From Phallusia mammillata (Eukaryota): a stretch of DNA of 64,000 bases. The stretch is from NCBI GenBank assembly GCA_965637545.1, contig OZ281494.1, positions 13,950,001 through 14,014,000 on the forward strand, in the 5' to 3' direction. The number at the start of each line of letters is the position of its first letter. The first letter of the stretch is position 1. Positions 26,516 through 49,655 of this stretch are shown here, piece by piece. Under the pieces are notes generated by a model, which made no database searches, had not been told where the DNA came from, and was given only the letters and a program-made list of their open reading frames with translations. A program made the position numbers and the translations under genes.

Positions 26516-29500
26516 TTATTTCGATGGCAAATTGGATTTATTATCCTGACTTTCCTGTAAGTTTCCCTCCACACTAGACAAAGCAACCATTGGTGTGGTA
26601 TCACTTGGTGTTATTTGTGCCTGAGTTGGCATAGTTTGTATTCCAGATTGCGGGTTAACTTGTAAAGTTAAGGATTGTTGTGTGGTATTGCGCATGGCAA
26701 CCTGTAACACATGAACAAATTGATGCTACTATTACATAATTATACAACAAAAACTATTGGACACAGCATAAAGTTGTTGTACCTCAGAAATACATAGTAA
26801 CTGTAACTACATTATTATGAAAAGTTTACACTTGTTTGAAAAGTTGTTTGTGGTGTAACAATGCACTAAGCACCAATTTCACCAACTTAACAAGCCTCCA
26901 AAAATGTCTAGAGCAATGAGCAAATTAATTGACCTGTTGTGAGATAAGCTGTGGGTGAACCTTCATCGCGGCGGCAGCAGCAGATGGTTGGTTGCTGATG
27001 GCAACCACTGGAGGTCTCTGCATTGCCACTGGGGTTGAAGCAACAATCATCTGCTGGGGTAGAGATGGGCTTTGGTTGCTACTTGCTATGGCATGTAGTC
27101 GAGACTGTATGGCAGAAAATTAAATTTAATGCATTTGAACCTAACATGTCCAAGGTACCGTAAGACTTACTCTGGGTGTTGACTGCATCTGTTGTATTTG
27201 CGGGGACATTAGTCTTTGTTGGGGCATTAAACTGGATGCTGATACGATAGTAGTGCCAGCTGACAGGGGAAGTTGTGCTAATTGAGGTGAAGATGATAGC
27301 TGCACAAAAGAATGGATAATGTTCTTAAATACCAAAGTAGAGCCAAGCAAAATACTGATTGTGGGCAATACCAGTTAAGTAAAACATACCTGTTGAGAAC
27401 GTGGAATGAGTGTGTGACGAATAGTGGTGTTTGAAGCAGGGGCAGTTGGAGTTTGCAGCAGTTTGGTAACAGTAAGTGTAACTGGTGCCTGTAATACATT
27501 AACAACCACCATTAGGTATAGCTTAGACTGGTAAAGGTCGATGTGAGCAAAGCTCAGGCAATCAGACAGAGCTAATACAAACTTTCCACATTCTGATCAG
27601 ATTGTATTTATCATCACTTTGCCTGGCTTACAAATAGTGTTAAATCCAGACAACTAAATTCACACAGAACGTTTAAATAGTAATGTCCCTACAAACCTTT
27701 GAAGTTTGTGGCCTTCTTTTCTGTTGTGCAACAATCTGACTAAACATTTCAGCTTGTATTTGTGGTGTCATCTTTACAGCAGTACCACCACCAGACACCA
27801 ACTGATGAGAAGCCACAGTTGCATAAACAGTTTTTGGCTGCTTTGCTGCAATCATCTAACCATGAAAAGAAATATATTTAGGAAATAACTTTTGTGACAG
27901 GTTTTACAGGAAGCAGCAATGGTATTTTTGAAAAAGCACATGACTAAAATATTATAACTATCTATGAGCATTGGACTTAATCATGCCCAATAACATTTTT
28001 CTTTATTAAGATTAATTGTCCATCAGATCTCATCAAATTATATTTTTACCTGTCTTGGTTGCTGACGTTTCATCAACTGTTGCAACTGAGTTCCAGTGAC
28101 AGTGCCCTAAAAACAAGTTGCAAGCAATTTTAAACACATGTTACTATTGGTGTCACAAGGATAACCTTACCTGACTCCCAGATACAATCATTTGCTTGGC
28201 AGAACTGGAACTTGCAGCATTAAAATCTGACAAACTCATTGCTGAAAAAAAAATCAATATTAGAGTGTGTGTCTGGTGAAACATTAGTTTCTGTGCAAAG
28301 GGCTGTTTTGTATTCCCATAGACCAATCAATTACTATTATTGCATGTAACACAAAGCCATTGCCTTGTTAGACTAGTGACAACTAGATATTTGGGCCTAT
28401 GGTTGCAAATGAAAACAAAATTCCCTGTGAATAACTTTAGTATCGACCTGTCACATGTGCAAATTTGAACCAAAGAATGTCGCGTTGGGCAAAAAAGTGA
28501 GTAAAAAAGACTTAAGCGATGTGTTCTCAAGGGTACACATAAAATAGATTTACCAAAAAAGTAATCATCAAAATTTTTTTGAAAGTTGAATTTTAGGTTG
28601 AAAACATAAAAACATGTGAAGCTTCACCTGCTGCAAGATTGGTGACAGGAACAGTGATGGGAAGTGGTTTGCTTGTTGTGATTTGTTCACTTGCTTGTTG
28701 GGCCGCAAGTGTCCTCACTCGCTGGGCCTGAACTTGTGCCTGCATTGGTGCAATTTGGACCTACAAGTAAAAAAGTTTAGCAGCGTTTATATCACTTTTG
28801 AAGCTATGTAAAATACCCAGCATGAAAAATGTGTAGTTCATAGCACTTTATTTTGTTACCTGAGGGCGTTGCTGGACAGTTTTTATTGGTCGCTTCATAA
28901 TCATTTCAAGCTCCTGTTGTGTGAAAGCTCTTGCCATCTTGGCAACCTAAAAAACAATACTTTGATGCTGAGAGGTGGTACAGAAATAAAAGCAGCATAA
29001 TCTGTGCCATAGACGTGTCTTTAAGACACCTTTTTCAAGAAACAACACAGCTACCCCTTTTTGAGACTTAGGTGGTCAGATCAATATCCCATACCTGGAC
29101 TTTCTTTCCACCAGAAACAATGGTGCCAGTAATGTCCTGCTGCTGAGGCTGCTGCTGTTGTTGCTGTTGTGTAACACGCAGTTGTTGAACCGACTGAAAC
29201 ATTTTTTCAGAATTTTATTGGCATGAAAGTTACAGCACACAAACAAACAGCTACCTGCTGTTGCTGTTTGGCTGGTGTGGTTTGAAGAACCTGCTGCTTT
29301 TGTACTTGGTGTATCTGTTGCATTGAAGTCAGTTTCTGCACTTGAGTGCCACCTGCTAAATCGACAACACAAGGCACTTCACCCTCAAACTCAGAAAAAA
29401 TCCCCATGCTAACCAATGAAACTTTGCCACAATGGCTACTTTAAACGAGATTTTATATTGTTAACATACTTCTTGGAGGGTAGGTAACGGTCGATCTAGT

Positions 29501-49655: not shown

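What the first reader, a model, noticed from the sequence alone, without database searches (positions are those of the whole stretch)
27555..48265. Chromatin-remodeler gene acting as a ~20-snoRNA polycistronic host
Seen: about 20 distinct intronic, sense-strand C/D and H/ACA folds in the primary gene, mostly one per intron; none was seen in neighbouring USP7. About 11 of these loci have pockets or guides matching universal rRNA segments (18S Am27, Am166, Psi609, Psi863, ~Psi918, Psi1056/1081; 28S Am1511, Psi3616, helix-69 region). Established: human SRCAP hosts SNORA30 and EP400 hosts SNORA49, while U27 and U44 sit in non-coding hosts (SNHG1, GAS5). Inference: this lineage has concentrated much of its rRNA-modification guide set in a SWR1 ATPase gene, coupling H2A.Z remodeler transcription to ribosome maturation.
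Basis: partly seen in the sequence, partly recalled or inferred. Interest (0 to 1): 0.82.

Follow-up and report, generated by a model that had tools for sequence, protein, structure and literature searches.

The report
Domino gene hosting about 18 snoRNAs
The introns of a domino/SRCAP-type chromatin-remodeler gene carry about 18 small nucleolar RNA genes, one per intron, and nearly all recur in the same order in a related species, so they are real; this is an unusually loaded example of an ordinary arrangement, with no evidence of a special link between chromatin remodelling and ribosome production.

Summary
The minus-strand gene (49.7 to 26.5 kb) is a domino/EP400-type SNF2 ATPase, and RNA contigs confirm its GT-AG introns. 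I count 7 box C/D and 11 box H/ACA loci (16 distinct sequences, since U27 and H/ACA "I" each have two copies), never more than one per intron.

No Rfam family reaches its gathering score, but all credible weak hits lie on the sense strand and keep the family guide elements.

Nine loci pair with conserved rRNA sites in a panel of real rDNA units: the U44, U27 and snR60 sites, a 28S GUUUGACUGGGG site, 18S next to the 530 loop, 28S helix 69, and two others.

Decisive evidence: a related species' domino locus from metagenome contigs has homologs of 15 loci, collinear and on the sense strand. Boxes and guides are conserved and stems show compensatory changes. Apart from exons, almost nothing else aligns.

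USP7 has none.

"Polycistronic", "much of the guide set" and "coupling to H2A.Z" are not supported. Crinoid and ant domino genes host only a few, different snoRNAs.

Discrete small RNAs were not shown.

Side findings: a 16.4-kb tandem amplification (also noted separately by the scan, s1-375459) and a conserved structured RNA of unknown class.

The parts
26516..49703 (-). Host gene: domino/SRCAP/EP400-type SNF2 ATPase, about 35 short exons
   Evidence: Pfam EP400_N and SNF2-rel_dom; tblastn to domino orthologs; spliced RNA contigs with GT-AG joints.
48123..48265 (-). H/ACA 'A' in intron 48056-48315. Its 3' hairpin is SNORA1-like and targets 28S AUCAUUG[U]GAAGCAGAA
   Evidence: Rfam SNORA1 23.5 bits with conserved pocket strands; target score 12 in 2 rDNA units; 3' hairpin, pockets and ACA conserved in the related species. 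The 5' hairpin is not conserved.
46755..46878 (-). H/ACA 'B' in intron about 46709-47044
   Evidence: Two-hairpin MFE, z = -4.57; strict scan hit; snoR99-like pocket; lower stem and pocket strands of the 5' hairpin conserved, upper stem diverged. Only a weak 10-bp match to 18S GUAUGG[U]UGCAAAG.
45787..45915 (-). H/ACA 'C' in intron 45718-45952; its 5' pocket is paralogous to that of B
   Evidence: Two-hairpin MFE with H box ACAUGA and ACA at -3; 5' hairpin and H box conserved in the related species. No firm target.
45377..45511 (-). H/ACA 'D'; its 3' hairpin targets 18S GCAUGGAA[U]AAUGGAAUAGG
   Evidence: Strict scan hit; target score 12-12.5 in 5 rDNA units with no decoy hits at that level. 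No clear homolog in the related species.
43996..44128 (-). H/ACA 'E' in intron 43914-44159
   Evidence: MFE -45.3 kcal/mol, z = -4.63; strict scan hit; homolog at L125 7812-7937 with conserved pocket strands and compensatory upper-stem changes. Target uncertain.
43376..43444 (-). Box C/D, orphan guide, in intron 43191-43483
   Evidence: GUGAUGA and CUGA boxes plus terminal stem; homolog at L125 8464-8521 with 22 nt of D guide plus the D box conserved. No rRNA target found.
42483..42613 (-). H/ACA 'K' in intron 42467-42646
   Evidence: Strict scan hit; z = -2.45; 5' hairpin, pockets and H box conserved. Its apparent target hits were an artefact of a spacer repeat in one panel contig. Its 3' end is only about 17 nt from the 3' splice site.
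42126..42270 (-). H/ACA-like 'F': conserved SNORA38-like pocket hairpin (about 42146-42210); overall outline uncertain
   Evidence: Rfam SNORA38 22.5 bits with conserved pocket strands; hairpin conserved with compensatory changes. The MFE is not a two-hairpin fold, the proposed 5' hairpin is not conserved, and it starts about 8 nt after the 5' splice site.
41554..41690 (-). H/ACA 'G' in intron 41380-41856; its 5' hairpin targets 18S GGGCAAG[U]CUGGUGCCAGCAG, next to the 530 loop
   Evidence: z = -3.57; 13-bp bipartite match in 8 rDUnits at 14 nt from the H box; guide strands and boxes conserved in the related species. Words of this stretch alone are held by probable RNA runs.
41142..41276 (-). 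H/ACA 'H' in intron 41063-41302; its 5' hairpin targets 28S helix 69, UAUGAC[U]CUCUUAAGG
   Evidence: z = -2.44; 13-bp match in 9 of 10 rDNA units with 0 decoys; weak homolog with conserved lower stem, pockets and H box.
40408..40494 (-). Box C/D, snR60/Z15-like, in intron 40343-40532; D' guide targets 28S GGUGA[A]CUAUGCC
   Evidence: Rfam 28.7 bits with the family guide kept; target found in 8 of 10 rDNA units; 23 nt of guide plus D' box identical in the related species; ends 65 nt from the 3' splice site.
39556..39687 (-). H/ACA 'I-b' in intron 39439-39719; 99% identical to I-a
   Evidence: Strict scan hit; two homologs in the related species (E about 1e-19); consensus two-hairpin fold of 34 pairs with 4 compensatory pairs. 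Target unknown.
38512..38574 (-). Box C/D U27-like copy b, in intron 38379-38768; D' guide targets 18S AGUCAU[A]UGCUUGUC
   Evidence: Rfam SNORD27 32 bits with guide and D' box identical to the consensus; 12 Watson-Crick pairs in the rDNA units. The related-species homolog scores 48.2 bits, E = 8.5e-6, with guide and boxes 100% conserved.
38099..38171 (-). Box C/D in intron 38034-38208; D' guide targets 28S GUUUG[A]CUGGGGCGG
   Evidence: Boxes plus a 5-bp terminal stem; target found in 4 rDNA units; guide conserved with C/U transitions that keep pairing to G; ends 65 nt from the 3' splice site.
36764..36837 (-). Box C/D, orphan D guide, in intron 36688-36889
   Evidence: Boxes and stem; C box and 16 nt of D guide plus D box conserved; ends 76 nt from the 3' splice site. 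Only a 9-nt match to 28S GUGAAAUAC.
36460..36522 (-). Box C/D U27-like copy a, in intron 36390-36575
   Evidence: Rfam SNORD27 29.1 bits; same guide and target as copy b; ends 70 nt from the 3' splice site.
35865..35996 (-). H/ACA 'I-a' in intron 35616-36030
   Evidence: Same as I-b; the intron is defined by the loose RNA contig end that matches 35586-35615.
27555..27625 (-). Box C/D U44-like, in an inferred intron of about 27489-27668; D guide targets 18S UCUAG[A]GCUAAUAC
   Evidence: Rfam SNORD44 28.3 bits; 7-bp terminal stem; target found in 8 of 10 rDNA units; ends 66 nt from the inferred 3' splice site. The related contig ends before this point, so conservation could not be tested.
37790..37845 (-). 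Uncertain eighth C/D-like element in intron 37517-37877
   Evidence: C box plus 28 nt, 85% conserved. The related species has CUGA 65 nt downstream; the window has CUGU at the aligned place. Only 9 bp to 28S UCGGCUCUU.
37095..37267 (-). Element J copy a: conserved structured intronic RNA of unknown class, not a canonical snoRNA
   Evidence: 96% identical to copy b; homolog in the related species, E = 3.5e-12; three-hairpin consensus with 5 compensatory pairs and a conserved tail ending in ACA. No boxes, and single-sequence fold z = +0.45.
39980..40152 (-). Element J copy b
   Evidence: As for copy a.

Best explanation
The domino/SRCAP-type gene on the minus strand is a conventional multi-intron snoRNA host carrying an unusually large load: 7 box C/D and 10-11 box H/ACA genes, each alone in its own short intron.

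Inferred mechanism, from established snoRNA biology: the host pre-mRNA is transcribed by RNA polymerase II, snoRNP core proteins assemble on the intronic RNA during splicing, the lariat is debranched, and exonucleases trim it to the protein-protected 60-145-nt snoRNA. The mature RNPs then guide 2'-O-methylation (C/D) or pseudouridylation (H/ACA), mostly of 18S and 28S rRNA.

Shown here: gene identity, splicing, box and fold architecture, strand and intron specificity, guide complementarity to conserved rRNA sites for 9 loci, and cross-species conservation of 15 loci confined to boxes, guides and stems.

Inferred, not shown: production of discrete small RNAs and the modifications themselves.

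The load most likely built up by local duplication (two near-identical pairs; the paralogous pockets of B and C) and by gain of snoRNAs in a constitutively expressed, intron-rich gene. It then persisted at least since the split from the related species.
For: - Host identity and splicing.
- Rfam: weak hits are almost all snoRNA families on the sense strand (24 of 28). SNORD27, snR60 and SNORD44 hits keep the family guides, and SNORA1, SNORA38 and snoR99 hits keep pocket strands.
- Chance controls: C/D scan 10 minus, 1 plus, 0.4 shuffled; strict H/ACA scan 8, 0, 0, 0.
- Position: five of seven C/D RNAs end 65-76 nt upstream of the 3' splice site. By my own knowledge of the literature this is the known optimum for intronic C/D processing.
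- Targets: C/D guides match conserved rRNA sites in 4-10 of 10 rDNA units. H/ACA pockets at score 12 or more give 32 real hits against 1, 6 and 6 in decoys, driven by G, H, D and A at verified conserved sites.
- Conservation: related-species contigs L124, L125 and L126 hold collinear sense-strand homologs of 15 loci. In an unbiased gene-to-gene alignment, every conserved block is an exon or a candidate except three.
- Pattern of conservation: boxes and guides are conserved while other parts drift. For 'I', 34 consensus pairs include 4 compensatory ones. Overall, 66.5% of window pairs are kept against about 43% for slid controls, with 49 both-sided changes.
- The related U27 homolog scores 48.2 bits, E = 8.5e-6.
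Against: - No Rfam family reaches its gathering score in the window.
- No discrete small RNAs were seen. The RNA runs are assembled contigs, probably from poly(A) libraries, with zero depth over several snoRNAs. Runs that hold the words of G could equally reflect intron retention.
- Targets are unassigned for 9 of the 18 loci: 5 H/ACA sequences (B, C, E, K and the two copies of I), F, and 2 C/D loci. At low score thresholds H/ACA target hits do not exceed decoys.
- D has no detectable homolog, H only a weak one, and 27555 could not be tested.
- The outline of F is uncertain, and K lies very close to the 3' splice site.
- The rDNA panel comes from unnamed eukaryotes, not from this species.
Confidence: 0.88

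Rival explanations
1. One reading: the clustering is adaptive, so that transcription of the H2A.Z-exchange remodeler is coupled to the supply of rRNA modification guides and hence to ribosome maturation.
For: All the snoRNAs depend on one promoter (architecture). The arrangement has been kept in a related species. Human SRCAP and EP400 each host one H/ACA snoRNA; for EP400 this is confirmed in PMC12824223.
Against: Conservation of the snoRNAs follows from their own function and from the difficulty of moving them, and says nothing about coupling. Crinoid, ant and planthopper domino genes host different snoRNAs, few, or none, so there is no conserved domino-snoRNA relation across animals. Sixteen families is a minority of a normal repertoire. 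PMC12824223 reports SNORA49 levels changing independently of EP400. No expression data here bear on the idea.
Confidence: 0.07
2. A sizeable part of the set (a third or more) is not functional snoRNA but chance box-and-hairpin combinations or decaying copies.
For: No gathering-level Rfam hit. Five H/ACA sequences, F and two C/D loci have no assigned target. My permissive H/ACA scan gave 61 minus-strand against 38 plus-strand hits. The element in intron 37517-37877 has CUGU in place of CUGA.
Against: Fifteen loci have collinear homologs at a divergence where the flanking intron sequence does not align at all. Conservation is concentrated in boxes, guides and stems. Strict scans find nothing on the control strands or regions.
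Confidence: 0.06
3. Several of the target-less, well-conserved members (H/ACA I, K, E; C/D 36764 and 43376; element J) guide modification of non-rRNA substrates such as snRNAs or tRNAs, or have non-guide roles, so the locus is not purely an rRNA-modification set.
For: Their guide-like strands are strongly conserved: 16-22 nt in the two C/D loci and nearly the whole of I. Yet they match no conserved rRNA site in 10 rDNA units. J has conserved structure but no snoRNA boxes.
Against: The panel lacks this species' own rRNA, so targets in variable regions would be missed. My pocket definitions are strict.
Confidence: 0.35

Closest known systems
Vertebrate multi-snoRNA host genes with one snoRNA per intron (GAS5, SNHG1, and protein-coding hosts such as ribosomal-protein and translation-factor genes)
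   Same: One snoRNA per intron on the sense strand, short host introns, C/D RNAs about 70 nt upstream of the 3' splice site, and a mix of C/D and H/ACA guides for rRNA.
   Different: The host here is a large chromatin-remodeler gene, whereas the usual hosts are ribosome- or translation-related genes or non-coding RNAs (PMC13736004 reports that enrichment). The load of about 18 is, to my knowledge, above that of typical protein-coding hosts. By my own knowledge, U27 and U44 lie in SNHG1 and GAS5 in human.
Human EP400 / SNORA49 and SRCAP / SNORA30
   Same: Same host gene family (SWR1/domino-class ATPase) with an intronic H/ACA snoRNA. The EP400-SNORA49 pairing is confirmed in PMC12824223.
   Different: One snoRNA per human gene, against about 18 here. 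No Rfam similarity to SNORA49 or SNORA30 was found in the domino introns, so there is no sign that these are the same snoRNAs.
Rfam SNORD27, SNORD44, snosnR60_Z15, SNORA1, SNORA38 and snoR99
   Same: Guide elements or pocket strands and boxes match the family consensus. The predicted targets are the families' conserved rRNA sites.
   Different: All score below the families' gathering thresholds in the window (17-32 bits against 35-74). Sequence outside the boxes and guides is diverged.
Domino loci of the crinoid Antedon mediterranea (L001) and the ant Vollenhovia emeryi (L003)
   Same: Sense-strand intronic snoRNAs in the orthologous gene: four SNORD52-like in the crinoid, one at 46.5 bits above the gathering score, and snoR639/H1 at 42.8 bits in the ant.
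   Different: Different snoRNA families, far fewer of them, and no sequence homology to the window's set.

Membership tests
Box C/D snoRNA | C box RUGAUGA near the 5' end and D box CUGA near the 3' end, brought together by a short terminal stem; length about 60-100 nt | tested here: met
   Seven loci have exact boxes and 3-7-bp terminal stems, 63-87 nt long. The boxes are conserved in the related species for the six that could be tested.
Box C/D snoRNA | An antisense element of 10 nt or more directly upstream of D or D', with the target nucleotide opposite the fifth position | tested here: met
   Met for 27555, 36460, 38512, 38099 and 40408 against real rDNA units. For 36764 and 43376 the D guides are conserved but no target was found, so for those two the result is inconclusive.
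Box H/ACA snoRNA | Hairpin, hinge with ANANNA, second hairpin, then ACA three nucleotides from the 3' end; length about 120-150 nt | tested here: met
   MFE folds of A, B, C, D, E, G, H, I and K show this layout. The strict scan finds 8 on the sense strand and 0 in controls. H and ACA boxes are conserved in the related species. F does not meet it.
Box H/ACA snoRNA | A bipartite pocket complementary to the target on both sides of an unpaired U, 14-16 nt from the H or ACA box | tested here: inconclusive
   Met for G, H, D and A at conserved rRNA sites (12-13 bp, 14 nt from the box). B, C, E, I and K have no hit above decoy level.
snoRNA (either class) | Accumulation as a discrete stable small RNA bound to core proteins | not testable with these tools
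   Only assembled contigs of probable poly(A) RNA runs were available. They show spliced exons, a few unspliced pieces, and no depth over several snoRNAs. Words of G alone are held by some probable RNA runs, which does not show a discrete RNA.
Rfam SNORD27 (RF00086) | Score at or above the curated gathering score of 52 bits | tested here: not met
   32.0 and 29.1 bits in the window and 48.2 bits in the related species. The guide plus D' box is identical to the consensus, so it works like U27 even though formal Rfam membership fails.
Domino/SRCAP/EP400 (SWR1-class SNF2 ATPase) host gene | An N-terminal EP400_N/HSA region and a split SNF2 ATPase (SNF2 N-terminal domain plus Helicase_C) with a long insertion | tested here: met
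   EP400_N at 31.9 bits (cut-off 27) and SNF2-rel_dom at 55.5 bits. Collinear tblastn to domino of oyster, urchin, crinoid and insects includes the helicase C exons. The related-species locus carries HSA, SNF2 and Helicase_C calls.
Polycistronic snoRNA cluster (plant, yeast or trypanosome type) | Several snoRNAs within one intron or one non-spliced precursor, released by endonucleolytic cleavage | tested here: not met
   Every locus sits alone in its own GT-AG intron.

The most novel reading that the evidence does not exclude
The promoterless 3' 16.4 kb of the gene (25839-42266), which carries 12 of the snoRNA loci plus both copies of J, is amplified in tandem: at least 2.6 copies, with the two distal copies identical. 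If the array is real and transcribed by read-through or re-splicing, it would act as a snoRNA dosage cassette, and would show a protein-coding host part-way to becoming a dedicated repeat-type snoRNA host like the mammalian SNORD115/116 arrays.
Probability: 0.12. Interest if true: 0.7.

Novelty: new member of a known kind. Interest (0 to 1): 0.47.

Why it matters
The locus supplies a ready-made, comparatively validated set of about 16 snoRNA families for a lineage where covariance-model annotation fails, since there were no gathering-level Rfam hits. An earlier unchecked scan note calls the organism a sea squirt.

It shows that a large regulatory gene outside the translation apparatus can become a major snoRNA host and remain one across species. 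That bears on how snoRNAs move between host genes during animal evolution: U27 and U44 sit in non-coding hosts in human.

It also shows in practice that "no Rfam hit" is a poor refutation criterion for fast-evolving lineages, and that one related contig gave far more evidence than any motif scan.

It does not establish any functional tie between chromatin remodelling and ribosome biogenesis.

Tried and rejected
- **Rfam at gathering scores:** 0 hits in the window. This reflects divergence and is not evidence of absence.
- **Weak Rfam hits at 43493-43573 (Afu_300), 44791-44893 (SNORA73) and 35338-35409 (sR3):** all lie inside coding exons, so I rejected them.
- **USP7-side hits at 52438 (in an exon) and 60246 (SNORA49-like):** the second folds as a single long-range structure, z = -1.07. 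Rejected.
- **Permissive H/ACA scan and permissive pocket-target search:** too noisy, with 61 against 38 hits and 70-155 decoy hits per candidate. Replaced by structure-constrained versions. A first, over-strict version found nothing.
- **K's high target scores:** all fall in a tandem spacer repeat of one panel contig, so they are an artefact.
- **Second guide of U27 copy b, matching an 18S GCC[A]AGGAUG site:** not conserved in the related species, so not claimed.
- **Fewer differences between tandem copies inside the snoRNAs:** looked significant by columns but not by events (4 observed, 6.7 expected, p = 0.19). Dropped.
- **J as a snoRNA:** no boxes and no excess folding energy, so rejected. 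It nevertheless proved conserved and structured, and its class is left open.
- **Ortholog loci:** the oyster and Lytechinus isoforms were not on record, and the tick gene was too long to fetch.
- **Literature:** searches for domino as a snoRNA host, for snoR639 and for Ciona snoRNA hosts found nothing relevant.

**Procedural notes:**
- I used the large representative protein search early, because the word search cannot return proteins longer than 1.75 times an exon-sized query.
- The rDNA panel was fetched with an 18S pattern that carries the non-human GTAGTCATATG variant. I took no contig for human, and I used no human sequence.
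Full report
**Setting**

The window holds a minus-strand gene whose ORF pieces hit Pfam EP400_N (49323-49655) and SNF2-rel_dom (44083-44481). On the plus strand from 52247 there is a USP7-type gene with MATH and UCH domains. An exhaustive protein search with the SNF2 exon returned full-length domino/SRCAP orthologs. The source databases name the closest ones as helicase domino of an oyster, sea urchins, a crinoid, a tick and insects. tblastn with them lays out about 35 short exons from about 49.7 kb down to about 30.5 kb, with further ORF-supported exons down to 26.5 kb. 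Contigs from four probable RNA runs laid on 35850-41700 show 16 joints, all CT..AC on the plus strand. That is GT..AG on the minus strand, and it fixes the intron boundaries there. For the rest of the gene I inferred splice sites from reading frames and consensus motifs. An earlier, unchecked scan note calls this a sea-squirt genome. The similar distance to very different animal phyla is compatible with a fast-evolving lineage, but I did not verify the species.

**Is the observation there?**

Rfam at gathering scores finds nothing in the 64 kb. At a permissive E-value, 28 hits appear in 26.5-49.5 kb. Of these, 24 are snoRNA families on the minus strand, and only one hit of any kind lies on the plus strand. 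The alignments are informative:
- The two SNORD27 hits (36459-36523 and 38511-38575) carry the family's whole antisense element and D' box, GACAAGCAUAUGUCUGA, unchanged.
- The snR60/Z15 hit keeps GCAUAGUUCA-CUGA.
- The SNORA1, SNORA38 and snoR99 hits keep both pocket strands.

My own scans give the chance level:
- A strict C/D scan (exact boxes, terminal stem of at least 4 bp) finds 10 hits on the minus strand, 1 on the plus strand and 0.4 per shuffle.
- A strict H/ACA architecture scan finds 8 on the sense strand of 25.8-50 kb, none antisense, and none on either strand of 50-64 kb.
- Single-sequence folds of the H/ACA candidates all show hairpin, ANANNA, hairpin, ACA at -3, except F. Their z-scores run from -1.1 to -4.6.

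After removing hits that lie in exons (43493-43573, 44791-44893, 35338-35409), the tally is 7 C/D and 11 H/ACA loci, F being incomplete. These are 16 distinct sequences, because U27 (90% identical copies) and H/ACA I (99%) each occur twice. No intron holds two. Nearly every intron of 175 nt or more in 35.6-48.3 kb is occupied, and the empty introns are mostly 146 nt or shorter. Five of the seven C/D RNAs end 65-76 nt upstream of the 3' splice site. By my own knowledge of the literature, that is the optimal position for processing of intronic C/D snoRNAs. The USP7 side yields only two weak snoRNA-type hits. One lies in an exon and the other lacks the fold.

**Targets**

The window has no rRNA, so I fetched real rDNA from metagenome contigs with a conserved 18S 5' pattern in its non-human variant. 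I kept ten contigs that hold 18S through 28S landmarks.

C/D guides, with the target opposite position 5 upstream of the box:

| Locus | Guide | Target | rDNA units |
|---|---|---|---|
| 27555 | D | 18S UCUAG[A]GCUAAUAC (U44 site) | 8 of 10 |
| 36460 and 38512 | D' | 18S AGUCAU[A]UGCUUGUC (U27 site), 12 Watson-Crick pairs | 9 top hits; exact 12-mer in all 10 |
| 40408 | D' | 28S GGUGA[A]CUAUGCC (snR60 site) | 8 of 10 |
| 38099 | D' | 28S GUUUG[A]CUGGGGCGG | 4 of 10 |

For H/ACA pockets, a loose search was no better than decoys. With true boxes and closed pockets required, hits at score 12 or more number 32 real against 1, 6 and 6 in reversed, shuffled and antisense rDNA. They come from four RNAs:

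| H/ACA | Hairpin | Target | rDNA units |
|---|---|---|---|
| G | 5' | 18S GGGCAAG[U]CUGGUGCC, next to the 530 loop | 8 |
| H | 5' | 28S UAUGAC[U]CUCUUAAGG, helix 69 | 9 |
| D | 3' | 18S GCAUGGAA[U]AAUGG | 5 |
| A | 3' | 28S AUCAUUG[U]GAAGCAGAA | 2 |

I did not check the human position numbers. B, C, E, I and K, and the C/D loci 36764 and 43376, remain without a firm target. K's apparent hits were an artefact of a spacer repeat.

**Conservation, the decisive evidence**

A word search with a lineage-specific exon (38759-39007) found one protein at 59% identity. Its 22.7-kb metagenome contig (L124 and L125) is a collinear domino ortholog with HSA, SNF2 and Helicase_C exons and a long exon. A second contig from another metagenome (L126) is 98.8% identical to it. 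Searching the candidates against these contigs finds homologs on the sense strand in the same order as in the window: A, B, C, E, CD43376, K, F, G, H, snR60, J, I (twice), CD38099, CD36764, U27. E-values run from 1e-19 to 1e-3, with H weaker.

In an unbiased alignment of the whole gene against that contig, every conserved block is an exon or one of the candidates, with three exceptions. Two lie downstream of the long exon's stop codon. The third is a 46-nt block in the one long 'empty' intron.

The pattern inside the blocks is what snoRNAs show:
- C/D boxes and one guide are conserved while the rest drifts. U27 guide plus box is 100% conserved, snR60 has 23 identical nt, and the two orphan C/D loci keep 16 and 22 nt of D guide.
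- The 38099 guide changes only by C/U transitions that preserve pairing with the G-rich target.
- H/ACA lower stems, pocket strands and H and ACA boxes are conserved, with diverged upper stems that keep pairing.
- For I, the four-sequence consensus is a two-hairpin fold of 34 pairs, 4 of them with both-sided changes.
- Across nine H/ACA RNAs, 66.5% of the window's predicted pairs stay pairable against about 43% for slid partners, with 49 both-sided changes. The structure was derived from the window sequence, which favours it somewhat.
- The related U27 homolog reaches 48.2 bits against SNORD27, E = 8.5e-6.

D has no detectable homolog, and 27555 lies beyond the end of the contig.

**What it is and how it works**

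This is the ordinary animal mode of snoRNA expression, with one guide RNA per host intron released after splicing and debranching, but in an unusual and heavily loaded host. It is not polycistronic.

The load is specific to this lineage. The crinoid domino locus has four SNORD52-like hits, one at 46.5 bits above the gathering score. The ant locus has one H/ACA, snoR639 at 42.8 bits. The planthopper locus has none detected. None of these is homologous to the window's set.

So SWR1-class genes host snoRNAs repeatedly, as in human EP400 with SNORA49 (PMC12824223), but with different passengers. That argues for opportunistic gain over a conserved functional partnership. The same paper reports SNORA49 levels changing without a change in EP400.

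The phrase 'much of its guide set' is not supported. Sixteen families is a minority of a normal animal repertoire (my general knowledge), and unchecked scan notes list other hosts in this genome: RPLP2, RPS6, FUBP, hnRNP A/B and a non-coding host. A recent survey finds multi-snoRNA hosts enriched among ribosomal-protein and ribosome-biogenesis genes (PMC13736004). That is why this host is noteworthy.

**What is not shown**

No discrete small RNA was seen. The runs available are assembled contigs that mainly show spliced exons and have no depth over several snoRNAs. Probable RNA runs from two studies do hold 39-92% of the words of the G-only stretch, but retained intron would look the same. The modifications themselves are inferred.

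**Side findings**

1. **Tandem repeat.** Window 1-42266 is a tandem repeat with a 16,453-bp period.
   - The repeated segment is 25839-42266. It runs from about 0.7 kb past the stop codon to 12 nt inside the F intron.
   - The two distal copies are identical over the 9.4 kb available. The copy joined to the gene's 5' part differs from them at 90 events, and its exon indels are in frame.
It does mean that 12 of the snoRNA loci occur up to three times in the window.
   - I could not tell a real array from an assembly artefact. The scan noted the same feature separately (s1-375459).
2. **Element J** (37095-37267 and 39980-40152). It has no snoRNA boxes and no excess folding energy. It is nevertheless conserved in the related species (E = 3.5e-12) and has a three-hairpin consensus with 5 compensatory pairs and a conserved tail ending in ACA. 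It is a structured intronic RNA of unassigned class.
3. **Intron 37517-37877.** It holds a conserved C box followed by 28 nt. The related species has a CUGA D box downstream, where the window has CUGU. This may be a decaying or atypical eighth C/D RNA.

**Verdict**

The finding is real and well supported as a set of intronic snoRNA genes. It is a new and unusually rich member of a known kind. The proposed regulatory coupling is unsupported.

Noticed in passing
window 1-42266 (segment 25839-42266; copies at 9386-25838 and 1-9385): Tandem repeat with a 16,453-bp period covering the 3' two-thirds of domino, with 12 snoRNA loci and both J copies. The two distal copies are identical over 9.4 kb. 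The gene-attached copy differs at 90 events, with in-frame exon indels of 21 and 12 nt. The right breakpoint lies 12 nt into an intron and the left one about 0.7 kb past the stop codon. I could not decide between a real array and an assembly artefact.
   Followed up: partly
window 37095-37267 and 39980-40152 (minus strand); L125 13934-14085: Element J: two 96%-identical intronic copies, conserved in the related species. The consensus has three hairpins with 5 compensatory pairs and a conserved single-stranded tail ending in ACA. It has no C/D or H box and no Rfam hit; its class is unknown.
   Followed up: partly
window 37790-37845 (minus strand), intron 37517-37877: A conserved C box plus a 28-nt block (85% identity). 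The related species has a CUGA box 65 nt downstream, whereas the window has CUGU. There is 9 bp of complementarity to 28S UCGGCUCUU. Low-depth RNA contigs retain this intron.
   Followed up: partly
window 44395-44541: A 148-nt palindrome (90.5% self-complementary) inside a domino intron, with a weak Hammerhead_3 hit (21.2 bits, gathering score 48.5) at 44407-44455. This is the subject of another scan note.
   Followed up: no
window 33404-33673 and 33216-33267 (minus strand): Two blocks conserved with the related species, just downstream of the stop codon of the 610-aa exon. They are probably 3'-UTR sequence of a short isoform.
   Followed up: no
L001 (Antedon mediterranea domino locus) 26574-30161 and 7897-15074: Four SNORD52-like sense-strand hits, one above the gathering score, and five copies of a 67-nt repeat that hit a trypanosomatid H/ACA model at 26.6-27.5 bits.
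   Followed up: no
L003 (Vollenhovia emeryi domino locus) 5785-5922: A sense-strand H/ACA snoRNA that matches snoR639/H1 above the gathering score, 42.8 bits.
   Followed up: no
window 44083-44160 (minus strand): The in-frame translation of the 5' part of H/ACA E (…[12 protein letters not shown]) happens to resemble the true next exon (…[10 protein letters not shown], at 43786-43913). This drew HMMER alignments past the real exon end.
   Followed up: yes
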